This document shows positions 5,151 through 62,556 of a DNA stretch of 64,000 nucleotides, in pieces. Source of the DNA: Octopus sinensis (Eukaryota); the NCBI RefSeq assembly GCF_006345805.1, contig NC_043005.1:104160001-104224000 (forward strand), given 5' to 3'. Made by a program: the position numbers and the translations under genes. Position 1 is the stretch's first letter, and each line of letters starts with the position of its first letter. Under the pieces are notes generated by a model. The model worked only from the letters and a program-made list of their open reading frames with translations, made no database searches and was not told the DNA's origin.

Positions 5151-5453
5151 TTCCTTAAAGATGAACAATTACCTCCCCTGTCCCTAATAATAACGATCAC
5201 CAACTACCTCCTCTTGGATTTTTCTATTTATTGAATCATTCAGTCATAAACTTGTCCACACACAACATAGATTAAAATCTTCTCAAGAAAATACGAAATT
5301 ACAATAATTTCAATGTCATGCTTAGCGATAGCAAAACCGGTCGACAAATACATTATAAAATATATTTTTAAAATATATTAAAACTATGTAAAGTGTATGC
5401 ATTTTCTTTTTAACTCACCACGTGGGGATAATTGAAATTCCTCCCTTTTTATT

Positions 5454-8057: not shown

Positions 8058-8216
8058 CACATACTAGTACATACATACATACATACATACATATATACAT
8101 ATATACACACATACGTACGTACGTACGTATGTATGTATATATATACATATATATATATATGTACATTTACATCCAAATACGCACTTCCAAACATTCACAT
8201 GTGTATATATATATAT

Positions 8217-8443
8217 TTCTTTACTACCCACAAGGGGCTAAACATAGAGAGGACAAACAAGGACAGACAAAGAGATTAAGTCGATTACATCGACCCAAGT
8301 GCGAAACTAGTACTTTATTTATCGACCCCGAAAGAATGAAAGGCAAAGTCGACCCAGGCGGAATTTAAACTCAGAACGTAACGACAGATGATATGCCGCT
8401 AAGCATTTCGCCCGGCGCGCTAACGTTTCTGCCAGCTCACCGC
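8217..8443 (-). mobile_element. SINE family A copy
   Basis: high similarity to 33522-33749 and 53960-54178. Confidence 0.85.
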
Positions 8444-8977
8444 CATTCACAGGTATATAAACTTTGAACGGATGTATGCATGTATATGTGTGTTTGTGTG
8501 TATTTTGTGTGTTACAGGATGCGTGTATATATGCTTGCGTACGTATTTTTGTTTACTATGTACAAGTATATATACATTAAATTAATTAATAATGTAATTA
8601 ATGTATATATGTATAATTATAGTTAAATGCGCTTGGACACACGTGCGCATACATACGTATGATTACAGCCAAAGCTACATATATATGTGAATGTCACCCT
8701 AATATTGACATTCACACACATACACACACGTAAACACACATACACGTACACACACACATGCGCCCATACAAATATGCGGTTACATTTATCGATAAAACAC
8801 TGTCTCACTCTCTCTCTCTCTTTCACCCGCTCATTCTGCGTTTGTATGTGTACGTGTGTGTGTGTGTCTCTCTCTCTATATATAAAATAGATAGATAGGT
8901 ATACATATATATAAAGAGACATACATACACATATATATATATAGGTACATATAAGTATATATATATATATATATTAT

Positions 8978-15499: not shown

Positions 15500-16614
15500 C
15501 ATATATATATGAAAGCACACATACACGTGCATGCAGACATATGTGAATATAGATACATATATATATGAATATGCGGCAAGAGGGGAGAGTGAGAGAAAGA
15601 GCGCTAGAGAAAGGGAAAAGAAAGAGTTATAGAGAGAAAGAAAGTGACAGACAGTAGAGTGTTTGAAAGACCAATGAGAGTAAAATTTAATTGAATTTTG
15701 TCGTATACTTTAATTATTACCTTATATAATTAGCATCTTCAGTTGAAATTCAAATTAAGAAATTAAAATTTACAACAAATCGATAAAACATTTTGTAAAA
15801 TATTTCTAAATACTGAATTATAAAAATTGATTATTAAATATTTTTCAGCGCAACGAACGTTTCACACCTTATATTATTATACACACATGTATATATACGC
15901 ACACATACATACGTAAGTTCATACATTCATACATAAATACACATTCATATTTATGTATACACACGCACACACATACGTATAAGTATTTATATATGTATGT
16001 ATATACTTACATATACATATATCCACACGTATACACATATGTGTGTGTGCGTATGCATGTATATATAATTTACTATTTCGTTATTAGTGGGATCAGCTGA
16101 AAAGTTGTCCACCAGTGAAAGATATATTTTCCTTAATATACACAGAATTTAAATTCAAGCTAGTGTTAGTTTCAGGCTGTGGAAGCACTATAAACTAACA
16201 ATCAAACTTTCAAACTCAAATATACAGCTTAGATGATACTTTTTTGAAAATAACGAGAAAAGGTTGTGGTCTTTGAGAGAACATGGAGGAAGGACTAGAA
16301 GGACTAGAAGTCAAAAAGTGGAGAGAGAGAAAAAGCAAAAAATAAAATGGAGTGGGGGGAAGAAAAGGAAAAAAAAACTCAAGAGCTACGACCTTTTCTC
16401 CATTCAAATCAGTATAGATGTGCATGGTGTTCGAACCAGAATTAATATTGTTGGTGTATATTAATTTTACAAGAAGAAGATCAAATTCTGTGAAACTGCA
16501 AAGCTCAACCCGGAGAAGGTGGTGTCCGACAGTTCAGCAAAAGATATTTGTTCATTTCTTTTATCTTTTGTCTTTTATTTGTCTTAACCATTACACCCCA
16601 GAACTTGTTTTTTA

Positions 16615-16940
16615 AAGCCTGTCGTTTATTCCAACGGTTTCTATTGCCAAATTACTAAGGTACTGGGACGTAAACACACCAGCACCGGTTGTCAAGCAGT
16701 TGTGGGGGGCAAACATAAGCACAAAGACATACACACTGACACGCGCGTACACATGCAAACACACGCACACAAACATACACGCACACACATACGACGAGCT
16801 TCTTTCATTTTCTACCCAGAAAGCTTTGACCGGCCTGAGGCTATTGTAGAAATCATTTGCACAAGGCGTCACACAGTGGGATTGAAATCAGAACCTTGTG
16901 GTTGGAAAGCAAAATTCTGACCACAGAGCCACTCACGTGC
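16615..16940 (-). mobile_element. SINE family C copy (internal CA/TG microsatellite)
   Basis: GTAAACACACCAGCACCGGTTGTCAAGC..GGGGGCAAACA..AAGCTTTGACCGGCCTGAGGCTATTGTAGAA; homologous to 62222-62560 and 59435-59745. Confidence 0.8.
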
Positions 16941-16959
16941 TTATATATGTTTACATTTA

Positions 16960-17620
16960 AGAAGAATTTCTGATCTGGAATTCTTAAATCTAACAAGAAA
17001 TGAGATTTTTCGGCTAAACAAAGCCTGCATCTTTGTGATTCATTGAAATATAGCATGCATCGCTCCACGATGCTCCATCCGATAGTATGATGTACAGATT
17101 CCATTTATAGCGAGAAAACTTTTATGGCTTTCTTCTGATCTACATGTGGGAAAGAAGAACGATGGTTGCATATCTGTTTTTAAAATTACTTTCTCATAAA
17201 CCAATGTAATTTTTCTTTCGAGATTTATTATATTGGAACGTTGTTATGACTTCGGCTTCAAAACCCACTGAGCTGATCATGCATGTCAGGTCGAATAGGA
17301 AAGCTTCTGGGTCTCAACAGTTATACCTTGGAGTGGGCTCCCCGTATGACATTTCTATATCAACAATATCCTTGCTATACATTTATTGCAAATCACTTTA
17401 CATTTAATCCCTATTTCCCTGGTGTTAATTTTAAAGAGTGAAGTCTGTTACCGAATTTTTACTAGCAACGCATAGTATAATGAATGTAACTGCATAGTTA
17501 ATTATCCGTATAGTACTGTGGTTGTTCATTGGAACATTTCATACTTACATTTTCTTGGATGAAATATCTAACCAATTATACAGATTTGATAAATTCTTAA
17601 ATTTCTGTACGTTGATAGTA
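16960..17620 (-). mobile_element. Decayed Penelope-like GIY-YIG endonuclease fragment (probably Nematis-like)
   Basis: frameshifted translation ENYIGL*ESNFKNRY / NHRSSFPHVDQKKAIKFSRYKWNL / IGWSIVERCMLYFNESQRCRLCLAEKSHFLL; same motif order as the 48-49 kb element. Confidence 0.75.
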
Positions 17621-17632
17621 TGTATATAGATT

Positions 17633-17780
17633 AAGGCGGCGAGCTGGCAGAATCGTTAGCACGCTGGATGAAATGCTTAGCGGTATTTCGTTCGTCGCGT
17701 GGTTCTACGGTCAAATTCCGCTGAGGCCGACTTTGCCTTTAATCCTCTCGGGGTCAATAAATTAAGTACTAGTTACGCAC
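17633..17780 (+). mobile_element. SINE family A copy (3' truncated)
   Basis: AAGGCGGCGAGCTGGCAGAATCGTTAGCACGC..GTCAAATTCCGCTGAGGCCGACTTTGCC. Confidence 0.85.
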
Positions 17781-32760: not shown

Positions 32761-33521
32761 TCACGACGATGACGACGACGACGACGACGACCACCACCAC
32801 CACCATCACGAACATCACCACGACCATCACACCACAATCACCATTGTCATTGTTATTGTTATTAGTTTTATTGTTGGTGTTGTTGTTTACGTCGTCGTTC
32901 TCGTCGTTGTTGTTGTTGTTTATCGTTGTCATAGATATTATCGCCAATATTGATAATAATATTAATAATGATGGTCTTTTTATTGTCATTGTCTTTCACG
33001 ATGTTGTTGCTTTATTTTATGTGTTTTCTAATTTGTTTTTTTTTACCATTTATTTGTTTCCTCGTTCTCGACATCGTTGACTTCGTTGTTGCTGTCATCG
33101 GCGTCTTGCTGTCATCGCTGTTGCTTTGGTCGTCGCTTTTAACGATTTTAATTGTTTTTGAATTTTCACATTCTTTTTTATTGGCATGAATTCTTGGTGC
33201 AAATATCTTTGCATTGACTGGTGTAGTAGTAGTAGTAGTAGTAGTAGTAGTTGCTGCTGCTGCTGCTGTTATTATTTCTGTTTTTCTTACAGCAGCAGTA
33301 GCAGTAGGTGTAGGAGCAGCAATAGTAGCATCATCATAATCATCGTTATAATCATCGTACCACCACTGATACCATCACCACCACCACCATCACCACCATC
33401 AACCACCACCACCACCACCAACCACCACCTACACCACCACCACCACCACCTACCACCCACCACCACCACCATCACTACTACTACCACCATCACCACCTCC
33501 ACCACCATCAATACTACTACT

Positions 33522-33749
33522 ATTTCTTTATTACCCACAAGGGGCTAAACACAGAGCGGACAAACAAGGACAGACATAGGTATTAAGTCGATTACATCGA
33601 CCCAGTTCGTAACTGGTACTTAATTTATCGACCCCGAAAGGATGAAAGGCAAAGTCGACCTCGGCGGGATTTGAACTCACAACGTAACGCAGACGAAATA
33701 CCGCTAAGCATTTCGCCCGGCGTGCTAACGTTTCTGCCAGCTCGCCGCC
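33522..33749 (-). mobile_element. Full-length SINE family A copy
   Basis: minus: GGCGGCGAGCTGGCAGAAACGTTAGCACGCCGGGCGAAATGC..GAGTTCAAATCCCG (B box)..CCCCTTGTGGGTAATAAAGAAAT. Confidence 0.9.
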
Positions 33750-42075: not shown

Positions 42076-43812
42076 ACGCGGTCACATATATATATATGTA
42101 TGTATATGTATATGTGTATATATATACACGTCTACCAAATGCACTCACAATGTTTTGGTCGGCCTCGAGCTACAGTAAAAGACACTTATCCAAAGTGCCA
42201 AGCAAAGAGATTGAAACCAGAACCATATGCATGTGTGAGTGTATTTATGCTTGTGTCTATATCTGTGTGCGCATCTGTGTGTGTGTGCGTCTGTGTGTCT
42301 ATGTTTATAATGAGCATTATCTGTATTTGCTTGTATTTGTGCATCGACATTTCTTTATTAAAGTAGTGGATATCCAGTCAAGTTGCTAAACAGTGTTATA
42401 CTATACCTATATATCTTAACTATACTGCATGTGAAGCAAAGAGAGAGGAAAAAGAATGCCTTCACACACAAACAACACTCAGCTCCTCTCATCACATACA
42501 TATGTGTATATATGTATATATATATATATATATGCGTGTGTGTATATGTATGTGTACTGGCATGTATACTGACATATACGGATTAATGTGTATACATACA
42601 TATGTAGGCAGAAGCACATGTAGATATATCTTACGTATGTGTGTGAACAGGAATATTATACTCACACGGAGCACATATAAGTGTATGTCTTGCCGTAGAT
42701 ATTGGTCTGTGCATAAGAGATTTGCTGTATGAAATTGCACATATCTACTCAAAAACATATATGCACATACACATTGATATAGATATAGTCGCATATTAAT
42801 ATGAATAACCACATATATGTCTGCATGTGTGTGAGTGTGTGTAAGCGCGAGCGTGCGTATGAAAGCATGGGTGTTTGCGGATTTATATGTGTATATGTGT
42901 ATATATATATGAGCGTGTGTATATGTATGTGTGTGTATATATATTAATATATATGTTTAATATACAGGCATACGTATATATATACATACACACATAGATT
43001 CATATACATACACACATAGATACAAACGCACACACACATACACACACACACACACACACGCATATATATTCGTATGTATGTATGGTATGTATGTATGTGT
43101 GTATAAAAGAGTGTTTGCACCTACGCGAAAGAAGTATGAGATGTTAATGTCCAGAGCGTATTAATCTATATGGCGAGATTTTGATGAATGCTTTGACAAA
43201 CATTCGGCTACGGTAGTCCGGAAACGAAATTGGCGCCATTTTCTTTTCGCTCTTATTGTCTACTGCCGACCGGGGACAGGTGGTGCCACCTTACGGGAGA
43301 AAACGTGACCGACACTTTACGTTATTCTGTCGGTTTATATATATATATTATAGGAAAAGAAGGGAGGAAAAAACAAAAAGACGAAACCAACAAACAAAAA
43401 AAGAAGCGGCAAAGCCTGCGGTGTTTGTTCTTTTGATAAGTTTATTGCTTTAAACGCCAAGCGGTCGTCTGCATTGAAGAGGATAAGAGGCAGAGAGGCT
43501 AGAGAATGTAGGGGAATAGAGGGAATAAGTGAATAATGGTATGAAAGAATCACATCATTGGTTGATGAAAATAGTAAAGAATCTAAGAAGAAAAACAAGA
43601 AAACGAATATAAAAATGAAGGATAATGATAAAGGGACGCCGAGTAGTCAAACTTGGATTTAGATTAATAAGAAATCACAATTACAGCAGCAACAACAACA
43701 ACAAAAGCAACAAACACTGTACTGTTTGTTGTAACTTAAGTAACAACAACAACAACAGTGACAATAGCAATAATGACAGCAACAGAAGAGATACACTTTT
43801 TGTATTAATAAG

Positions 43813-44237: not shown

Positions 44238-44627
44238 CAACAACAACAATTACATTAATATATATATTATCAGAAAAATTACAGCGGGTCCCTGTCCGGT
44301 CACTCAACTTCCTACAAATAGCTACCAAATCTCCCTAAAACAACCACGTCCTATTTTTAAATAACTGCGGAATGGTCACGGTTGGAATACTTTATAGGTG
44401 TACTTTTTCAGGGCTCAACAGATACTGAGCAATGACGAAACAGCAGCATGTCTAAAAAATAACATGAACAGCACCATAAGAAATATTATAACTATCATAA
44501 TACCTCCCACTACCACCATCGCCTCCACCAACGTCACCAGTGCCAACGCCACCGCTGCTACCATTATCACCATCATTACAACGAAAGCACCAATTAAAAG
44601 TACTAAATTAGAACAAAGGATTTATAT

Positions 44628-44795
44628 ATTTCTCTACTACCCACAAGGGGCTAAATACAGAGCGGACAAACAAGGACAGACATAGGTATTAAGTCGATTA
44701 CATCGACCCCAGTGCGTAACTGGTACTTAATTTATCGACCCCGAAAGAATGAAAGGCAAAGTCGACCTCGGTGGAATTTGAACCTCAGAACGTAA
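44628..44795 (-). mobile_element. SINE family A copy (5' part missing)
   Basis: near identical to 33522-33690. Confidence 0.85.
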
Positions 44796-46104: not shown

Positions 46105-46232
46105 AGACGGCGAGCTGACAGAAACGTTAGCACTCCGAGTGGAATGTATTGCGCTATTTCGTCTGCCGCTACGTTCTGAGTCCAAATTCCGCCGAGGTCG
46201 ACTTTGCATTTTAACCTTTCGGGGTCGATTGA
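46105..46232 (+). mobile_element. SINE family A 5' half
   Basis: ACGGCGAGCTGACAGAAACGTTAGCAC..AAATTCCGCCGAGGTCGACTTTGC..TTTCGGGGTCGA. Confidence 0.85.
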
Positions 46233-46393
46233 TATCAGCGTTTCCTTACGTCCGCGTGATAGAAAGTTAAAATTATTTTTGTCTCTGACGGGTTGTCCAG
46301 AAAGGTTTGGCTTTCGTGGATACAAAACCTTTGGTAATCCTATGACCAGAATTTAAGTTTTTGTTTTAAAATACATGTATATATATATTTATA

Positions 46394-46465
<72 letters not shown>

Positions 46466-46505
46466 TATACATACTATATATATATATATATATATAATAT
46501 ATATA

Positions 46506-46537
<32 letters not shown>

Positions 46538-46580
46538 ATATATATATATACTAATATAATATATATATATATGATATGTG

Positions 46581-46613
<33 letters not shown>

Positions 46614-46669: not shown

Positions 46670-46786
46670 AGGCGCATGCGTGGCTGTCTGATAAAAAGCT
46701 TGTTTCTCAGCCACATGGTCCCGGGTTCAGTTCCACTGTGCCACCTTGGGCACGGAATCTGAAAGAAGCCTGTCGTATGTATGTAA

Positions 46787-46872
<86 letters not shown>

Positions 46873-46944: not shown

Positions 46945-47100
46945 GCTTGTTCCCATCACTGCTTGACAAGCGGGGCTGGTGTGTATACGTCCGCGTAAAC
47001 TAGCGGTTCGGCAAAAGAGACCAAAAGGTATGTACCAGGCTTAAAACATTCGACTAAGAATTCTTGAAGGATGTTCTCCAGCATCGCCGCAGACTAATAA
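46670..47100 (+). mobile_element. SINE family C with expanded internal (TG)n
   Basis: AGGCGCATGCGTGGCTG..CACATGGTCCCGGGTTCAGTTCCACTG..CTTGACAAGC..AGCGGTTCGGCAAAAGAGACC. Confidence 0.8.
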
Positions 47101-47211
47101 CTGTATACATACATACATACAAACATACATACATACATACATACATACATACATACATTCATACATACATCAATCCATACATACATACATACATACATAC
47201 ATACATACATT

Positions 47212-47242
<31 letters not shown>

Positions 47243-47441
47243 CTTATTAACTAGACCCATATATGAGATAATGCTTATATTGTTTTCGCTTAATTTAAAC
47301 TTTGAATTGCTAACTGCCCCTGAAATTGCTGCTGTATTATTTATCTACAATTCTATCTTTTTATAAATTCTCTTTTTCGAGTAAAATGAGAGCGTGTACT
47401 ACCATTTTCGTATATGTGTAGATATGCTTGCTTAGACGGAT

Positions 47442-47477
<36 letters not shown>

Positions 47478-48143
47478 ACACACCCATACATACATGAGTG
47501 AGCAGGAATAGAAAAAATATATTTATGAATGTGTGAGTGTGTCTATATGTGTACAGGTGCGTGCGGCTGCGTTTCGCTCGACAGGTTTCTGGCAGTTCTC
47601 ACCTATACTGCCATCTAAACCATCTATCATTATCAAGTTAGAATTTTCTTTGATCTATGGCAGCTTAGAGGGTTCACCCTTCCATTTCTCCTTAGACATC
47701 CTGACAACAGTATTCTCCTTTATTTCCCAAAGGTGAAGTAAACATCAGAGAGGCTTTTCCTAACGCAGAAACTGTTGGAGCTACTCGGAGGTCTTATAAG
47801 CTTTTCTGATGCATCACAGTGTTGGAAACCCTGTCATATAAGTATCGTCAACAGGTAAAGTTGTAAAAAGTGTATAGCGGTGACACAGGCAAGATTGATA
47901 TCAAGAGGTAATATTTATTCCCATTTAAACGTGTATGTTCTGTTAGGACAAACTTCATTGCAGAAGATATCACGAGACATTCTTATAGCCTTTTGGTGCA
48001 GAATACTCAGTCGTCTGTTCATATCACCTGCGGGGAGATAAACGCTCGCCAACTCAAGCGCTAAGACCACAATTCCCATTCTACAAACTGGCAAACAATT
48101 CCGTGAATACTTTACCGGGTAACGCCGGGTAGTAAGTCTAGTA

Positions 48144-49700
48144 TGCATTTTATTTTGCGCTCTTCACCAGTATTAAGTAAATTATCATACTTATAAAATA
48201 AAATTTCTTTAAACTCATTAGAGCATAAATAACAACAATTAGCTCCTATAGTATATGATTTAGTTTTACAAATTATTTCCCAATTAAACTATAATTAATA
48301 TTTAGTGATTTAAGACTTCAAAGTACTTACTAAGTCCGGTTGAGTTGATTAAGTTTTTATTTTTAAAAGAATTCATATGTTGTGCGATTCTTAGTTTTAT
48401 TTTTGAGGAAGTAGAACCTATATAAACCGCTTTTGGGTAATTATTATTCTTAAAGTTATTATCATGTAATGTAACTATACATTTATACACTACATCGTTA
48501 ATATCACAATTATTATTTAATATACAATTAGATTTATCTCTACATGTACAATTAATATAAGTCTTATCATTATTATATATTATCAAATAATTTCTTTTTA
48601 TAAAAATTATTCAGTTTATATTTATTAAATGAAGAAATAATGTTACCAACATTATTAGTGGTAGAGTAACCAACTCCAAATTATTAAAAGAGAAAATGTT
48701 TCTATATTTACGATTATCTCTAATAAATAGTTCTATAACATCTAAAATCTCTTTAATAATATTCGTTTTTACTTGATCTCCATAAGGAACTATTAACCAA
48801 ATTTTATTCTTATTAACCTTATTATTATTATCATTATTATAAATATATTTATAATTCTTTATTTTATTAAAATTATTATAATAATTATATTGATAAAATT
48901 AATAATATTAATAATTCCTTAAATGCTGTACATAGATATAATTCTGATAATAATTTTAATAAAATAAAGAATTATAAATATATTTATAATAATGATAATA
49001 ATAATAAGGTTAATAAGAATAAAATTTGGTTAATAGTTCCTTATGGAGATCAAGTAAAACGAATATATTAAAGAGATTTTAGATGTTATAGAACTATTTA
49101 TTAGAGATAATCGTAAATATAGAAACATTTTCTCTTTTAATATTTTGGAGTTGGTTACTCTACCACTAATAATGTTGGTAACATTATTTCTTCATTTAAT
49201 AAATATAAACTGAATAATTTTTATAAAAAGAAATTATTTGATAATAATATTAATAATGATAAGACTTATATTAATTGTACATGTAGAGATAAATCTAATT
49301 GTATATTAAATAATAATTGTGATATTAACGATGTAGTGTATAAATGTATAGTTACATTACATGATAATAACTTTAAGAATAATAATTACCCAAAAGCGGT
49401 TTATATAGGTTCTACTTCCTCAAAAATAAAACTAAGAATCGCACAACATATGAATTCTTTTAAAAATAAAACTTAATCAACTCAACCGGATTTAGTAAGT
49501 ACATTTGGAGTCTTAAATCACTAAATATTAATTATAGTTTAATTTGGAAATAATTTGTAAAACTAAATCATATACTATAGGAGCTAATTGTTGTTATTAT
49601 GCTCTAATGAGTTTAAAGAAATTTTATTTTATAAGTATGATAATTTACTTAATACTGGTGAAGAGCGCAAAATAAAATGCAGACATAAGTTACTTTACCT
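48144..49700. mobile_element. Fold-back (head-to-head) palindrome of a Penelope-like RT-tail/GIY-YIG endonuclease ORF
   Basis: arms 48144-48879 and 48947-49681, 67-bp spacer; composite translation KIWLIVPYGDQVKTNI..YSTTNNVGNIISSFN..CTCRDKSNCILNNNCDINDVVYKC..VYIGSTSSKIKLRIAQHMNSF..STG.SKYIWSLK..NLLNTGEERKIKCRHK. Confidence 0.85.
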
Positions 49701-52700
49701 ATATAATAAGTTTCATGATAAATAGCAATAATAGTTCCCTTTTAGGTTACTTTAGTTTAGTTTTAAATTAGTTTAGATAATATATTTTTTGGTTATGTAG
49801 TCTAGGCTTTAATATAGTTAGTCTTTATTGATATTTCTTTGTTTTAATTAGTTCATTTTTAATGTATATTAATATAACAGTTTATGGTATGTTAAAACTT
49901 TAATAATTTATATTAGATTTTTTTATTTTCTTTATTTATATATTTTTTATTTTTTTTTTTATTTTATTTTATTATGTATTTTTATTATGCATTTTTTATA
50001 TGTATTTTGGAGGATATATATATATTTATATGTTGATGGGTTATTTAGTGGTGTTTTTATTGAGTTTTGTATGTATGTGTGAATGTTTACGATCCCTTTG
50101 TTTTTTGTTTTTTATTTGGTATGTTGAATTGACAGATTTTATTTGGGTATTGTCTGTTATAATAAAGTAAACACACCCATAACAAATATAAGTGCCCACT
50201 TCATTCGCGCGTACCTGGAATTGCATGTGAGCCTCAACATATACACCAAACGGCCACTCCCACCCCATACGGACAAATAAACACATACATCCCCAAAAAT
50301 GGGTGTAATCCCACTCACACCAATCATATGTATACAATTATACACACTAGAATAATACATAACTAACCCAAATATACAGAACATACCAAAAATCACCAAC
50401 TAACCACCTTCACAATTCCAAGCAACGCTAGTCCACCACCCGGTTACAATTCCCAACTCCCCCCTCCATACCCAATTTACACCCACATAGCAATCCCAAT
50501 ATATCCATCCATACATGGACGCACGTGCGTGAAGCACATGCACACAATAAATACGTACAACCCCCCAATACACACTCATATACATACGTATCAAGCTCGA
50601 CATCCACAGCAATACGCTTACACCCACTCACACCCAGATGGGTGAATTGCACAACCAGGGAACGCACACACACACGTGTGCGTATTTTGATTGTGCAACT
50701 CGCCCATATGCATGTATGCGGGCGCGATTACATTGTTGCACATATCGAGCCCAAATAGCATGCATATGTACATGTGAGGGGGTACACGCACATGACGTGC
50801 GCGTGTACCCCCTGCATTTACCCGTGCGTGAATATACACATGGAGACTACCACACAGGTACAAATGTGTATAGTAATGGGAGCCCCATCACTACACTCAA
50901 TGTATACTTTCACCCATCCGCACGGATGTGAAAGTGAATCTCCGGTGTATATGTTGAGGCTTATATGTAGCGCGTGGAGGCGAACGTCGTTGAAATTGTG
51001 AATGAATGGTGGAGTTGGGAATTGTAACCGGGTGGTGGACTAGCGTTGCTTGGAATTGTGAATGGAATAGTGTAGTAGTAAGGCAGGCATCGAGAATAGA
51101 TTTGGGTTACTGCAAGTTGTTTGTTAGAGCTGCTAAGATGAGCTAAAGCTCATAAATGTATATAATAATTTATCATGGTAGTTTTTTAAAGAATCCATTC
51201 ATAATAAATTTTTTTTTAAGTAGTGTTGGTTTGCCACGTGGATATAGTTTTTAGTTCCATTTATTCTATTTCTCCATTCATAATTTTAAATGACGTTTAC
51301 TTTCCATGGCGCGTATTCTTTTTTTACATAAGTTATATTTCTATGGTAACGTAATTTTGGTTTGATTTTTTTAACGGCTAAGAATTTAATTTCACTTCAT
51401 AATTTGAAACTGACTTGTAAGTATGTATTTTATTTCTCCTTATGTCATATTGTTATTTTTGATATTCTGGTTAATTACGATGTATTTAATGTTGTTTTTC
51501 ATAGGAGTGTTATGTATATGAGATTGCGTGTGAGTTTTTAGTTGTATAATTTATTTATCTGTATGAGTGTGGTGTGTAAATATTGTTGTATATATCGAGT
51601 TTAGTGAGTATGTATATGTGTATATGTGAGGGAGTATATGTATCTGTTGTGTTTGTGTGTTTTGCGTGTGTGTGTGTTTGTGTGTGAATGTGTATATGGG
51701 TTTGTTATTTAGATAAACAATGAACGGTAAACTTATCTCGGCAGCATTGAACTCGGAACGTAAGAGCCAAGAGAAATGTCCCCAAGCACTTTGTCCAGAA
51801 TGCTAACGATTCTGCCAGCTTGCTACTGTGCTAAAGTTGTAAATTTGTCTGTGTGGGGAGGGAGTGGGTTTTTGGTGTATATTGAGGTTTATAAGTTAGT
51901 ATAGGTATGTGTATAAGTCGTGGGTCTGTGGTTTACGTGTGTGTATTTGTGTGTGAATGTTTAGGTTAGGGGGATTGCTATATAGGTTTGTTATAGAGTT
52001 TAGCAAAGGGAGATTTTATCGTTATATGTTTTTAAGAGTTTTGGTTTATCATGGTTTTTTTAGGGAATTCGTGGTAATTTGTCTATTTTCGATGTTGGTT
52101 GTTTTATTACATTGTTTCATTCATAATTTTTGAGTGGTGTTCGTTTTGCCACGTGAATATTATTTTTAATTCCATTTATTCCATTTCTCCATTCATTATT
52201 TTAAAAGATGTTCGTTTCCAGAGCGGTTATACTTTTTATACATATGTTAAGTTCCTTGGTAAAGTAATTTTTGTTTGGTGTATATGTTGAGGCTTATATG
52301 TACTTGTGGGTGTGTGTGAGTGGGGTGGGTGTTTGTATTTGTTATGGGTGTGTGGTTTGTGTGTGTATTTTTGTGTGTGAATGTATAGGTTAAAGGGATT
52401 GCTATATAAGTATGTTATAGTGTTTAGTAAAGGGAGGTTTTATCATTTATGTTTTGTGAGTTTTAGCTTATCATGGTAGTTTTATAAAAGAATCCATTCA
52501 TAATTTTTGTGTTTATTTGTCTGTGTGGGTTGAGTGGGTTTTTGGAGTATATGTTGAGGTTTATATGTATGTATAGGTATGTGTAAGTGGTGTGGGTATT
52601 TGTATATGTCGTGGGTGTGTGGTTTACGTGTGTGTATTTGTGTGTGAATGTTTAGGTGGGGGATTGCTATATAGGTATGTTATAGAGTTTAGTAAAGGGA

Positions 52701-53340
52701 GATTTTATCATTATATGTTTTTATGAGTTTTGGTTTATCATGGTAGGTTTGTTAAGGAATTCGTAGTAATTTGTGTCTATTTGCGATGTCTGTTGTTTTA
52801 TTGCATTGTTTCATTCATAATTTTTAGTAGTGTTCGTTTTACCAAGTGAATATAATTTTTAATTCCATTTATTTCCATTTCTCCGTTCATAATTTTAAGT
52901 GATGTCCGTTTTCTAGAGCGTGAATGTGGGTTGTATGTGTGTGTGTGTGGGAGTATGAATAAGTATTGTGTTGAAGTATTTAGCTATTTTATTTTATTAT
53001 AGTTGCCTAGACGTTTTTAAGTGTATGTATAGGGATATATATATAGTGTGTGATTTAGTGTATGTATTTAGATATGGTTATATATAATTAGGTATATGTG
53101 TATGGGTGTATATATAGTTTATTATTATATTATTATTATTTTTTTGTTTTGTTTTATATTTTATATTTTATATTTTATATTTTATATTTAATTGTGATAG
53201 GTTTATTTTAGTTTATATATTGTTTATATATTGATTATTATGGATTATATATAGGTTATATAGGATTATATATTTATATTTTTTCATTCATACTTTAATT
53301 ATTTTAAATTATTATTTTTATATTTTAAATATTGATATTT
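49700..53340. repeat. Strand-skewed (G/T-rich) region with diverged 250-400 bp tandem units, an inverted block and a hairpin cluster
   Basis: unit copies at ~51160-51320, 51861-52230, 52275-52520, 52531-52925; C/A-rich inverted block ~50165-50640. Confidence 0.8.
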
Positions 53341-53352
53341 TAGATTGGAAGT

Positions 53353-53395
53353 CCACCTGAAGATTGTCGATCAAGACAAGAAACAATTGTAGTGG
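53353..53395 (+). ncRNA. Minimal type I hammerhead ribozyme motif, all elements intact
   Basis: CCAC-CTGAAGA-TTGTC(gatcaa)GACAA-GAAA-CAATTG-TA-GTGG. Confidence 0.8.
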
Positions 53396-53516
53396 CGGTT
53401 TTTTTGACTATTATTAAAATTTTATGTATTGATTAAGTCTTTCCTTGTTGTTTTGCAAAATAGTGGTTTTGTCTCTAATAATATTTTATAATATTTTACT
53501 AAAATAAAATGCAGAC

Positions 53517-53830
53517 TACATGGCGTGCGTTCAGTCCCACTGCATGACATCTTAGGGAAGTATATTTTACTATAACCTCGGGCCGACCAAAGCCTTGTGA
53601 GTGGATTTGGTAGAAGTATGTATATATTTGTGAGTGTGCGTCTGTGTTTGTCCCCCACCATCGCTTGACAACCGATGTCAGTATGTTTACGTCCTCGTAA
53701 CTTAGTAGTTCGGCAAAGGAGGCCGATTGAATGAGTACTATGCTTACAAAGAATAAGTCCTTGGATCATAAAGGCAGTGCTCCATCATGGTCGCAGTCAA
53801 ATGACTGAAAATCAAATATATTCTTTTACT
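53517..53830 (+). mobile_element. SINE family C, 5'-truncated
   Basis: GTTCAGTCCCACTG..CCTCGGGCCGACCAAAGCCTTGTGAGTGGATTTGGTAG..CATCGCTTGACAACCGATG. Confidence 0.85.
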
Positions 53831-53959: not shown

Positions 53960-54178
53960 ATGGTGGCGAGCTGGCAGAAACGTTAGCACGCCGGGCGAAA
54001 TGCGTAGCCGCATTTCGTCTGCCGGTACTTTCTGAGTTCAAATTCCGCCAAGGTCGACTTTGCCTTTCATCATTTCGGGATAGATAAATTAAGTACTAGT
54101 TATAATCGACTTAATTCGTGTGTCTGTCCTTGTTTGTCCTCTCTGTGTTTAGCCCCTTGTGGGTAGTAAAGAAATAGA
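53960..54178 (+). mobile_element. SINE family A copy
   Basis: GGTGGCGAGCTGGCAGAAACGTTAGCACGCCGGGCG..TTTAGCCCCTTGTGGGTAGTAAAGAAAT. Confidence 0.9.
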
Positions 54179-54472
54179 TATTGTTTATGTACTAGAGAAT
54201 CGAACCCCGCAATATGTATTATGTTTTTTTTTTCTATTCAATTTATTATGCATACTTTGCTTTCGGGACTCACAGTCTCTCTAGTGAAAAATATGCGTAG
54301 TTTCTGTAATAACGCAGAACGTATTGAGTGTCGAATCCTCATTTAATGAAAAGTTTTATATTAAGAATACAACACAGTATCTATCTATCTAACTGTCTAT
54401 ACCCATGCACACACACATACATACATACATACATACATACATACATACATACATACATACATACATACATAC

Positions 54473-54503
<31 letters not shown>

Positions 54504-59434: not shown

Positions 59435-59745
59435 GTACTATAGCCCCAGGCCGACCAAAAGCCTTGTGAGTAGATCTAGTAAACGGAAACTGAGAGAAGT
59501 CCTTCGTATATACACACACACACATATGTATATTATATATGTGTGTGTGTGCGTGTGTATGTGCGTGAATTTGTGTGTGCATTTCTGTGTTTGTCCCCCC
59601 TCCATCGCTTGACAATCTATGTTGGTGTGTTTACGCCCCCGTAACTTAGCGGTTGGGCAGAATAAGTATTAGGATTACAAATAATAAGCCCTGGGGTCGA
59701 TGCCCGGCATGGATGCCTCTAAATAACTGAAACAAGTAAAAGAAT
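59435..59745 (+). mobile_element. SINE family C 3' portion
   Basis: CTATAGCCCCAGGCCGACCAAAAGCCTTGTGAG..CATCGCTTGACAA..ATAACTGAAACAAGTAAAAGA. Confidence 0.85.
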
Positions 59746-62221: not shown

Positions 62222-62556
62222 TCACTTGTTTCAGTCATTTGACTGCGGCCATGTAGGAGCACCACCTTTGGTCGAACGAATCGACCCCAGAACTTATTCT
62301 TTGTAAGCCTAGTACTTATTCTATGGCTTCATTGCCGAACCGCTAAGTTACGGGGACGTAAACACATCAACATCAGTTGTCAATCGATGATGGGGCGGCA
62401 GACACAGAAATACATACATACATACAGTTTCCGTCTACCAAATCCACTCACAAAGCTTTGGTCGGTCCGAAGCTATAGGTGAAGGCACTTGCCCAAAGTG
62501 TCTCAAAGTGGAAGTGAGTGCCTAAAAATGTGGTTGGGAAGCAACCCACTCCTGCG

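What the first reader, a model, noticed from the sequence alone, without database searches (positions are those of the whole stretch)
48139..53518. 5.4-kb AT-rich composite bounded by an inverted 16-mer and TA dinucleotides
Seen: AAAATAAAATGCAGAC at 53501-53516 is identical to 49669-49684 (end of the PLE ORF) and matches 15/16 the reverse complement of 48141-48156. TA lies directly outside both ends (48139-40, 53517-18), and composition changes abruptly at both. Inference: PLE palindrome + 3.6-kb repeat region + HHR behave as one unit with TIR/TSD-like ends. That could be a PLE with an unusually long repetitive 3' region, a PLE captured in a TIR-type cassette, or microhomology-driven template switching. 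I do not recognise this architecture from described elements.
Basis: partly seen in the sequence, partly recalled or inferred. Interest (0 to 1): 0.72.

Follow-up and report, generated by a model that had tools for sequence, protein, structure and literature searches.

The report
Rearranged Penelope-like retrotransposon insertion, not TIR cassette
The 5.4-kb block is a compound insertion of a Hydra-clade Penelope-like retrotransposon (an inverted truncated copy next to a direct copy that ends in a hammerhead ribozyme); its 16-base "inverted ends" are three copies of one piece of the element's own endonuclease gene, so this is an unusual example of a known kind of element, not a new kind.

Summary
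AAAATAAAATGCAGAC lies at 49669-84 and 53501-16, and its reverse complement (15/16) at 48141-56. TA flanks both ends and GC drops from about 38% to about 20% at both edges.

The interpretation as a TIR/TSD-bounded unit does not hold. The 16-mer encodes K-I-K-C-R-H(1) of the C-terminal GIY-YIG endonuclease of a Hydra-clade Penelope-like element (PLE). This clade has a CxCX5C linker, no CCHH motif, CxxC/CxH motifs, a hammerhead ribozyme and a TA target preference.

The block consists of:
- an inverted 5'-truncated copy (48141-48890);
- a direct 5'-truncated copy (48891 onward);
- a 3.6-kb spacer of host-like repeats;
- a minimal hammerhead (53353-53395);
- 125 nt to the right end.

Head-to-head copies with matching outer termini at TA-rich sites are the described PLE architecture. 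I found the same layout in three other Hydra-clade loci.

Two features are atypical. The spacer is very long (stop-to-ribozyme distance is 61-235 nt in relatives). The inverted copy also ends at the ORF-internal 16-mer rather than beyond a ribozyme. The second feature is best explained by a template switch, a deletion or a 16-bp target duplication at the repeated 16-mer.

No other copy of this family and no empty site could be retrieved, so the exact route stays open.

The parts
48139..48140 (.). TA directly outside the left end
   Evidence: Read directly. It is consistent with the TA preference of Hydra-clade PLEs (PMC8557442), but it is not shown to be a target-site duplication.
48141..48890 (-). 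Inverted 5'-truncated PLE copy. It holds the C-terminal linker and GIY-YIG endonuclease region, and its outer end is the reverse complement of the 16-mer (48141-48156).
   Evidence: Inverted repeats I1-I5. Arm alignment shows about 98% identity, ending exactly at 48141. HMM match to the Hydra-type EN, E=2e-28. The 94-aa ORF lies at 48302-48586.
48891..49725 (+). Direct 5'-truncated PLE copy, coding part. It includes the 45-nt unique centre (48891-48935) and the EN domain, with the stop codon at 49723-49725.
   Evidence: Translations. Alignment to homologues. The centre reads as open frame only on the + strand.
49669..49684 (+). Internal 16-mer, reading AAA ATA AAA TGC AGA C = K I K C R H(1). 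It covers the conserved CxH motif of the EN domain.
   Evidence: The residues after it (HKLLYLYNKF...) still fit the family's C-terminal consensus.
49726..50170 (+). AT-rich, T-rich untranslated stretch contiguous with the ORF (19% GC)
   Evidence: It contains no hammerhead. Its similarity to 52951-53352 is no better than shuffled sequence.
50171..50672 (-). Inverted block of about two GT-rich repeat units. It reads AC-rich on the + strand, at 44% GC.
   Evidence: Reverse-strand matches to 51838-51924, 52273-52353 and 52503-52809.
50673..52950 (+). Direct array of diverged repeat units, with sub-units of about 265 nt and 150 nt. It includes a roughly 120-nt fragment of a host SINE at 51715-51835.
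   Evidence: for the units and for the SINE fragment. No Pfam domain is found in its ORFs. The units are not found elsewhere in the window.
52951..53352 (+). AT-rich, T-rich stretch upstream of the ribozyme (16% GC)
53353..53395 (+). Minimal type-I hammerhead ribozyme motif. The sequence is CCAC CUGAAGA UUGUC-GAUCAA-GACAA GAAA C-AAUU-G UA GUGG, with the predicted cut at 53391|53392.
   Evidence: Only hit in 64 kb to my descriptor. Helices are tabulated beside the hammerheads of four other Hydra-clade loci. The layout matches PLE hammerheads in PMC4209133. Rfam gives no match.
53392..53516 (+). The 125 nt between the ribozyme cut and the right end. The last 16 nt (53501-53516) are the terminal copy of the 16-mer.
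   Evidence: In relatives, insertion ends lie 41-155 nt after the cut. The value for PAc is from PMC11167929.
53517..53810 (+). Right flank. The TA is followed by a host SINE copy that starts at about its own nt 41 (ACATGG at 53518).
   Evidence: The left flank shows no SINE-head similarity above shuffled sequence.

Best explanation
**What it is.** This is a compound insertion of a Hydra-clade Penelope-like retrotransposon (PLE).

**Shown**
- Two 5'-truncated copies of the element's 3' coding end lie head to head (48141-48890 on the minus strand, 48891 onward on the plus strand).
- The direct copy runs through its stop codon, then a 3.6-kb non-coding stretch, then a minimal hammerhead ribozyme. 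It ends 125 nt after the ribozyme cut site.

**Inferred from published biochemistry**
- PLE proteins cut both target strands and prime cDNA synthesis from both, starting at a fixed internal site a short way downstream of the ribozyme (PMC11167929).
- This yields an inverted truncated copy beside a direct copy with the same outer terminus, preferentially at TA-rich DNA.

**The 16-mer (inferred)**
- The 16-mer is native coding sequence (K-I-K-C-R-H).
- The template that made the direct copy carried it twice, at the ORF end and at the very 3' terminus. The terminal copy is possibly a short 'tail' read from a neighbouring truncated copy in the source locus.
- The inverted arm was then shortened to the internal copy in one of two ways. 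Either the nascent 16-nt cDNA re-annealed to the ORF-end copy (copy-choice, like a strong-stop transfer), or a later deletion occurred between the two direct 16-mers.
- Either route makes the same 16 nt appear as an 'inverted end'.

**The spacer (inferred)**
- The 2.8-kb GC-richer core (50171-52950) is a spacer of host-like repeats. It was either captured or inserted later into the 3' untranslated region.
For: **EN domain identity**
- An exhaustive phmmer search gave 2994 relatives. The full-length relatives are about 700 aa and carry RWK, DKT and YRDDG motifs.
- The alignment shows the CxCX5C linker, no CCHH motif, and CxxC...E...N...CxH. These are the diagnostic traits of the Hydra clade (PMC8557442, section 11).

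**Hammerhead**
- It has a full catalytic core and three helices, and it is the only such motif in the window.

**Comparator loci of the same clade**
- L003: arms of 1189 nt at 100% identity. Each arm has a hammerhead and ends 41 nt past the cut. There is an extra tail of about 58 nt on one side, and the flanks are (TA)n.
- L006: a 3766-nt palindrome.
- L008: an inverted copy plus direct copies within (TA)n, with a tail on the direct copies only.
- L004: a tandem unit ordered ORF, 235 nt, hammerhead, 190 nt, ATG.

**The 16-mer and the arms**
- Arm homology stops exactly at the end of the 16-mer.
- The sequence after 49684 is genuine ORF.
- Both arms share a frameshift, so they come from one defective source.

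**Spacer**
- It contains a host SINE fragment and no coding domain.
- A. vaga Pen1 has 0.9-1.5-kb spacers of captured host DNA before the 3' pLTR, as well as microhomology-mediated deletions (PMC3846280).
Against: - Only one copy of this family was available. The family's normal 3' terminus, and whether it carries the 16-mer, are therefore unknown.
- In all three comparator inverted pairs both arms keep the ribozyme. The arm seen here is atypical.
- The origin of the 16-mer duplication is not shown.
- The spacer's own inverted sub-block (50171-50672) is unexplained.
- No empty site is available, and the TA cannot be shown to be a target duplication.
- The hammerhead is not scored by any Rfam model, even at E<=10.
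Confidence: 0.7

Rival explanations
1. Two-step self-targeting. First, a symmetric head-to-head insertion formed whose two arms both ended at the CRH codon (48141-49684), flanked by TA. Later, a second PLE cDNA (49685-53500) inserted into the last 16 bp of the right arm. Its 5' end joined by homology to the resident copy, which keeps the ORF seamless. Staggered nicks duplicated the 16 bp as a target-site duplication (49669-84 = 53501-16).
For: - A 16-bp direct repeat flanking a 3.8-kb segment is what a TPRT target duplication looks like.
- Symmetric arms with one shared terminus are the rule in the comparators.
- PLE endonucleases cut at PLE ends and form tandems, and 5' junctions by microhomology annealing are documented (PMC11167929, PMC3846280).
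- The canonical terminus would then be 53500, 109 nt after the ribozyme cut. That falls within the range seen in relatives.
Against: - The first event would need to start reverse transcription inside the ORF on both strands. None of the comparators shows this.
- No independent sign of two events was found.
Confidence: 0.2
2. The ORF-internal 16-mer is itself a second reverse-transcription start site, specified by sequence. The inverted arm was primed there directly.
For: - The left arm begins exactly where the terminal 16-mer ends.
- A second, older Hydra-type fragment in the window (about 17330-16947, minus strand) stops one codon after its CxH motif and is followed by ATATATAA. The normal tail after CxH is 9-15 aa.
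Against: - In PAc the start site needs flanking RNA on both sides (+20 to +172, PMC11167929). Here only 16 nt are shared.
- Among 269 relatives, almost none end at CxH.
- The three comparator pairs end only downstream of the ribozyme.
Confidence: 0.12
3. Adjacent but separate events. The palindrome with its short untranslated stretch, the repeat core, and the ribozyme-bearing end arrived independently. The core is either resident host DNA or another element.
For: - Composition breaks sharply at 50171 and at about 52950.
- The two AT-rich stretches are not demonstrably homologous.
- The core has its own inverted/direct structure and a SINE fragment.
Against: - It does not explain why the final 16 nt equal the ORF-end 16 nt, or why the left arm stops at the same base.
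- The direct copy has no ribozyme of its own before 53353.
Confidence: 0.1
4. A DNA-transposon-like cassette with 16-bp terminal inverted repeats and a TA target duplication has captured a PLE.
For: - Inverted 16-mers (15/16) lie at both ends.
- TA lies outside both ends.
Against: - The 'TIR' is PLE coding sequence and also occurs internally as a direct repeat.
- There is no transposase or any Pfam domain.
- No other copy was found in the window or in the scanned collections.
- The TA is equally expected from the PLE target preference, and the right-hand A belongs to the SINE.
Confidence: 0.03
5. Assembly artefact: a hairpin or chimeric long read created the palindrome or joined unrelated pieces.
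For: - Half of the arm differences are 1-nt indels in A/T runs.
- PLE tandem and inverted structures are known to trouble assemblies (PMC8557442).
Against: - Unique host sequence flanks both sides.
- The centre is asymmetric and coding.
- The same architecture recurs in independent assemblies of other species.
Confidence: 0.04

Closest known systems
Hydra-clade Penelope-like elements (Craig, Yushenova, Rodriguez, Arkhipova 2021, PMC8557442)
   Same: - C-terminal GIY-YIG endonuclease with a CxCX5C linker, no CCHH motif, and CxxC/CxH motifs.
- A hammerhead ribozyme downstream of the ORF.
- TA at the insertion site.
- An inverted 5'-truncated copy beside a direct copy.
- I saw the same layout in loci L003, L006 and L008.
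   Different: - Described members are compact (<3 kb). In my comparators the stop-to-ribozyme distance is 61-235 nt, against 3627 nt here.
- The inverted arm here lacks the ribozyme and ends inside the ORF.
- The flanks carry a single TA, not a (TA)n tract.
- The RT part is absent from both copies.
Adineta vaga Pen1 and related PLEs with captured spacers (Arkhipova et al. 2013, PMC3846280)
   Same: - A long unique spacer (0.9-1.5 kb) of captured host DNA lies between the element body and the 3'-terminal pLTR.
- Inverted pLTRs, microhomology-mediated junctions and deletions, and palindromes at inverted junctions are all described.
   Different: - It belongs to a different PLE clade.
- The spacer here is longer, internally repetitive, and partly inverted.
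- Capture is inferred here, not shown by comparing copies.
Poseidon PAc from Anolis: in vitro mechanism (Frangieh et al. 2024, PMC11167929)
   Same: - It cleaves and extends both target strands.
- Reverse transcription starts at an internal site roughly 90 nt downstream of the hammerhead cut. Here the right end is 125 nt downstream.
- An optional 'tail' arises from a second start site.
   Different: - In PAc the two start sites are adjacent. Here the two termini are 3.8 kb apart and share 16 nt.
- No biochemistry exists for this family.
L1 twin priming and retroviral direct-repeat deletion / strong-stop transfer (my own knowledge, not tested here)
   Same: - Priming from both strands creates inverted segments.
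- Reverse transcriptases switch between short direct repeats and delete what lies between them.
   Different: - Twin priming inverts the upstream segment and does not duplicate it.
- Those systems use other enzymes, and the analogy is mechanistic only.

Membership tests
Hydra-clade Penelope-like element | C-terminal GIY-YIG endonuclease with the GIY, YIG, R, H, E and N positions | tested here: met
   phmmer gave 2994 relatives, the best at E=3e-22. In the alignment Y30, Y51, R62 and E121 are invariant, and G53, H66 and N135 are nearly invariant. The HMM hits both arms. Pfam's own GIY-YIG model does not score it.
Hydra-clade Penelope-like element | Linker with CxCX5C in place of CX2-5CxxC, and no CCHH motif between GIY and YIG | tested here: met
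   C-T-C-RDKSN-C is followed by VVYKCIVT...YIGST, with only one Cys between the two motifs. The criterion is from PMC8557442, section 11.
Hydra-clade Penelope-like element | [quoted passage not shown] | tested here: met
   The sequence reads CYLCSNE...LLN...E..KCRH. The 16-mer encodes the CxH motif.
Hydra-clade Penelope-like element | Reverse transcriptase with RWK and DKT motifs in the same ORF | tested here: inconclusive
   Both copies in the window are 5'-truncated and hold no RT. Full-length relatives carrying this EN (P0024, P0037, P0085) do have RWK/RWQ/TWK, KADKT and YRDDG.
Hydra-clade Penelope-like element | Canonical hammerhead ribozyme in the untranslated region or pLTR | tested here: met
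   The motif at 53353-53395 has a full core and helices I, II and III, and is the only hit in 64 kb. It sits in the same position and has the same layout as in L003, L004, L006 and L008. Rfam models do not score it.
Hydra-clade Penelope-like element | Insertion into (TA)n | tested here: inconclusive
   There is a single TA on each side, whereas comparators L003 and L008 sit in long (TA)n tracts. No empty site is available.
Hydra-clade Penelope-like element | Partial tandem and/or inverted 5'-truncated copy (pseudo-LTR structure) | tested here: met
   The inverted copy 48141-48890 abuts the direct copy. There is no direct pLTR beyond the 16-mer.
TIR DNA transposon with TA target duplication (Tc1/mariner-like cassette) | Terminal inverted repeats specific to the element ends | tested here: inconclusive
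   An inverted 16-mer at 15/16 is present. However, it is PLE coding sequence, it is the tip of a 750-nt inverted arm, and it also occurs internally.
TIR DNA transposon with TA target duplication (Tc1/mariner-like cassette) | Transposase gene, or other copies sharing the same ends | tested here: not met
   No Pfam domain is found in any ORF of the block. No further copy was found in the window or in the metagenome scans. The host genome itself could not be searched.
TIR DNA transposon with TA target duplication (Tc1/mariner-like cassette) | Target-site duplication verified against an empty site | not testable with these tools
   The joined flanks match nothing else in the window. The right flank is a SINE starting at its nt ~41, and the left flank is not SINE.
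Hammerhead ribozyme, type I, PLE style | Core CUGANGA ... GAAA ... UH, with helices I and II and a short helix III capped by a palindromic loop | tested here: met
   Helix I is 4 bp. Helix II is 5 bp. Helix III is A-U plus C-G closing the loop AAUU. H17 is A. The criteria are from PMC4209133.
Hammerhead ribozyme, type I, PLE style | Self-cleavage | not testable with these tools
   This needs an in vitro transcription assay. PLE hammerheads are reported to cleave poorly as monomers (PMC4209133).

The most novel reading that the evidence does not exclude
In this PLE family a 16-nt sequence present at both the ORF end and the 3' terminus acts like a retroviral R repeat or a sequence-defined initiation site. 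Reverse transcription can then start at, or transfer between, two places 3.8 kb apart. This would mean that as few as 16 nt direct PLE cDNA initiation or strand transfer. The older fragment at ~16950 that also stops at its CxH codon next to TA-rich DNA would be a second instance.
Probability: 0.15. Interest if true: 0.55.

Novelty: new member of a known kind. Interest (0 to 1): 0.3.

Why it matters
- **Annotation.** Head-to-head PLE copies can mimic TIR-bounded cassettes. PLE hammerheads are missed by Rfam models.
- **Mechanism.** The locus is a natural record of PLE integration. It shows priming from both strands, a precise junction at a 16-nt repeat, and a long spacer between the ORF and the ribozyme-bearing end. 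With more copies, it could show where reverse transcription starts in Hydra-clade elements and how far short repeats steer template switching.
- **Host range.** It places a very AT-rich (20% GC) Hydra-clade PLE in a genome of about 35% GC whose SINEs look cephalopod-like. That resemblance rests on my recollection and was not tested.

Tried and rejected
- **Rfam.** Neither the gathering threshold nor E<=10 gave a hammerhead. The only hits were microsatellite-driven miRNA look-alikes.
- **Single-sequence word-indexed protein search.** No hits. The exhaustive search and a profile search were needed instead.
- **Pfam on the EN translation.** Only a spurious weak hit.
- **Exact look-up of the 94-aa window ORF in public assemblies.** Not on record.
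- **Metagenome scans.** One for the hammerhead and one for relatives of the EN protein. Both found nothing.
- **'Flanks rebuild one SINE'.** The right flank is a SINE from its nt ~41. The left flank scores no better than shuffles against three SINE heads. SINE-head patterns I recalled from memory found nothing in the window.
- **Simple '3.8-kb insertion with a 16-bp TSD of unrelated DNA'.** Rejected, because 49685-49725 is a genuine continuation of the ORF. It survives only as the self-targeting variant.
- **Homology between the two AT-rich stretches.** Not above shuffled sequence.
- **Terminus-like motif TTTACT-N-CAGAC at 50152-71.** It gives two hits in the window against 0.28 expected. However, its TTTAC belongs to the repeat unit, so it is weak.
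- **RNA folding of the last 125 nt and of the ORF-end context.** No structure beyond shuffles. The ribozyme is likewise not found by plain MFE folding.
- **General habit of Hydra-type copies ending at CxH.** Not seen among 269 relatives.
- **MAFFT alignment of five hammerheads.** It misaligned the 3' half, so I tabulated the helices by script instead.

Full report
**1. The observation**

- The 16-mer AAAATAAAATGCAGAC is exact at 49669-49684 and 53501-53516.
- Its reverse complement matches 15/16 at 48141-48156. Allowing two mismatches, 0.08 hits are expected in the window. The one further hit, at 5395, is unrelated sequence.
- TA lies just outside both ends.
- GC falls from 0.38 to 0.20 at the left edge and rises from 0.16-0.27 to 0.39 at the right edge.
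- The interior is not uniformly AT-rich: 50171-51080 is 44-47% GC and 51501-52950 is 34%.
- The palindrome has arms 48141-48890 and 48936-49684, about 98% identical, around a 45-nt centre. Arm homology stops exactly at 48141|49684.

**2. What the palindrome encodes**

- Merging frames gives a protein of about 235 aa. Its last 158 aa found 2994 relatives in an exhaustive phmmer search, the best at E=3e-22.
- A word-indexed search with the single sequence had found nothing, and Pfam does not recognise the domain.
- The alignment shows a CxCX5C linker (CTCRDKSNC), then VVY...YIGST with only one Cys between them (so no CCHH motif), then conserved R, H, E and N, with CxxC and CxH around E and N.
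- These are the traits that define the Hydra clade of Penelope-like elements (PMC8557442, section 11).
- Full-length relatives of about 700 aa carry the clade's RWK and DKT motifs and a YRDDG box.
- Both copies in the window are 5'-truncated and hold no RT.
- They share a frameshift, so they derive from one already defective source.
- The centre reads as open frame only on the + strand. The direct copy therefore extends 45 nt further 5' than the inverted one.

**3. The 16-mer is coding sequence**

- It reads AAA ATA AAA TGC AGA C, which is K-I-K-C-R-H(1), and so covers the conserved CxH motif.
- Twelve codons and the stop (49723-25) follow it. Those codons fit the family's C-terminal consensus.
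- The left arm therefore ends inside the ORF. The terminal copy at 53501-16 is most simply derived from the ORF-end copy, because the ORF-end copy is constrained by coding.

**4. The right-hand end**

- A descriptor for type-I hammerheads finds one motif in 64 kb, at 53353-53395.
- Its sequence is CCAC-CUGAAGA-UUGUC/GACAA-GAAA-C(AAUU)G-UA-GUGG. The cut is predicted at 53391|53392, 125 nt before the end.
- The short helix III with a palindromic loop is the layout reported for metazoan PLE hammerheads (PMC4209133).
- Rfam does not score it, even at E<=10.

**5. Comparators from the same clade**

| Locus | Structure | Hammerhead position | Terminus after cut | Flanks |
|---|---|---|---|---|
| L003 | inverted and direct copies, arms 1189 nt at 100% identity | 116 nt after the stop, in each arm | 41 nt on both arms; about 58 nt extra tail on one side | (TA)n |
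| L006 | perfect 3766-nt palindrome | present in each arm | about 45 nt | not TA-rich |
| L008 | inverted plus direct copies | 61 nt after the stop | +57 (inverted arm); about +155 (direct copies) | long (TA)n |
| L004 | tandem unit of about 2.5 kb: ORF, 235 nt, hammerhead, 190 nt, ATG | in the inter-ORF stretch | not determined | not applicable |

- The five hammerheads share one architecture.
- The literature describes the same features. An inverted 5'-truncated copy next to the element and a one-sided tail are reported in PMC8557442. Cleavage and extension of both target strands, with an internal reverse-transcription start downstream of the hammerhead, is reported in PMC11167929.
- Matching outer termini on an inverted pair at TA are therefore the expected footprint of a PLE, not evidence for a TIR cassette.

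**6. What is atypical here**

- *Spacer length.* The stop-to-hammerhead distance is 3627 nt, against 61-235 nt in relatives.
- *Spacer content.* The stretch holds the following, in order:
  - a T-rich part contiguous with the ORF (49726-50170);
  - an inverted block of GT-rich units (50171-50672);
  - a direct array of diverged units, with a 120-nt host SINE fragment at 51715-51835;
  - a second T-rich part.
- *What the spacer lacks.* It encodes no recognisable domain, and its units are not dispersed elsewhere in the window. The two T-rich parts are not demonstrably homologous.
- *Precedent.* In A. vaga Pen1, 0.9-1.5 kb of captured host DNA separates the element body from the 3' pLTR (PMC3846280).
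- *Inverted arm.* It lacks the untranslated region and the hammerhead, and it ends at the ORF-internal 16-mer.

**7. How the 16-mer pattern could arise**

All routes are ordinary PLE or RT behaviour, and none needs a transposase.
- *Route A (preferred).* The template carried the 16-mer twice. The inverted arm lost the interval through one of two events. Either the nascent 16-nt cDNA re-annealed to the ORF-end copy, or a later deletion occurred between the direct repeats. The terminal copy could be a short tail read from a truncated copy lying downstream in the source locus.
- *Route B.* A symmetric palindrome ending at the CRH codon formed first. A second PLE cDNA then inserted into its last 16 bp. 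Its 5' junction was homology-mediated, and the 16 bp became a target duplication. This reproduces the sequence exactly, but it needs an unusual first event.
- *Route C.* The internal 16-mer is a second initiation site.
  - A second, older Hydra-type fragment (about 17330-16947, minus strand) stops one codon after its CxH motif and is followed by ATATATAA and then a SINE. This is suggestive.
  - However, endings at CxH are not a general habit among 269 relatives.
- With a single copy of the family, I cannot separate these routes.

**8. Flanks**

- The right flank is a host SINE that starts at about its own nt 41 (ACATGG at 53518).
- The left flank is unique in the window and scores no better than shuffles against three SINE heads.
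- The flanks therefore do not rebuild one SINE, and no empty site is available. The TA cannot be called a duplication.
- Attempts to find other copies outside the window failed.

**9. Verdict**

The TIR/TSD-bounded-unit reading is not supported.
- The block is a rearranged member of a described family. Its two unusual features, the long spacer and the arm ending at a repeated 16-mer, both have precedents in the PLE literature.
- Interest is modest. It would rise if a genome-wide census showed that the 16-mer is a reused initiation or transfer site.

Noticed in passing
window 16947-17330 (minus strand): A second, older and decayed Hydra-clade PLE endonuclease fragment. Its ORF reads ...NSRSEILLKCKHI* and stops one codon after the CxH motif. 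It is followed by ATATATAA and then a full SINE head. This may be another copy that ends at the CxH codon.
   Followed up: partly
window 48141-50170 and 52951-53516: The PLE sequence is only 16-20% GC in a window averaging 35%. The ORF is rich in N, K and I. Some metagenomic relatives (for example P0037) are similarly N-rich.
   Followed up: no
window 48680 / 49143 region (both arms): Both arms share a frameshift between ...RNIFSFN.LEL and GVGYSTTNNVG. The source copy was therefore already defective and must have been mobilised in trans or duplicated at the DNA level.
   Followed up: partly
window 50152-50171 (minus strand): TTTACTTTATTATAACAGAC resembles the right terminus TTTACTAAAATAAAATGCAGAC. 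It sits at the outer edge of the inverted repeat block, just after an ATT. These are the only two hits of the pattern in the window, but part of the motif belongs to the repeat unit.
   Followed up: partly
window 53518-53810; also 16600-16941 (-), 46672-46800, 62229-62545 (-), 42118-42187 (-), 59436-59659: Copies of one SINE family with a tRNA-like head. A second SINE family is at 53960-54181, 33520-33746, 8209-8446, 17635-17775, 44623-44794 and 46109-46223, with a fragment inside the spacer at 51715-51835.
   Followed up: partly
window 46380-46610; 47098-47250; 54400-54500: A long (TA)n microsatellite and (TACA)n tracts near the block. The tracts give spurious miRNA matches in Rfam at relaxed thresholds.
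   Followed up: no
L003 3523-8017: In the comparator locus, a Copia-like LTR retrotransposon with 180-nt identical LTRs has inserted between the two arms of the PLE pair.
   Followed up: no
L007 8393-8865: A 235-nt tandem repeat, each unit carrying a canonical hammerhead on the minus strand. It is either retrozyme-like or the pLTR of another PLE.
   Followed up: no
L001 1-145: The start of this metagenomic PLE contig is a perfect hairpin palindrome. It is either a head-to-head junction or an assembler artefact.
   Followed up: no
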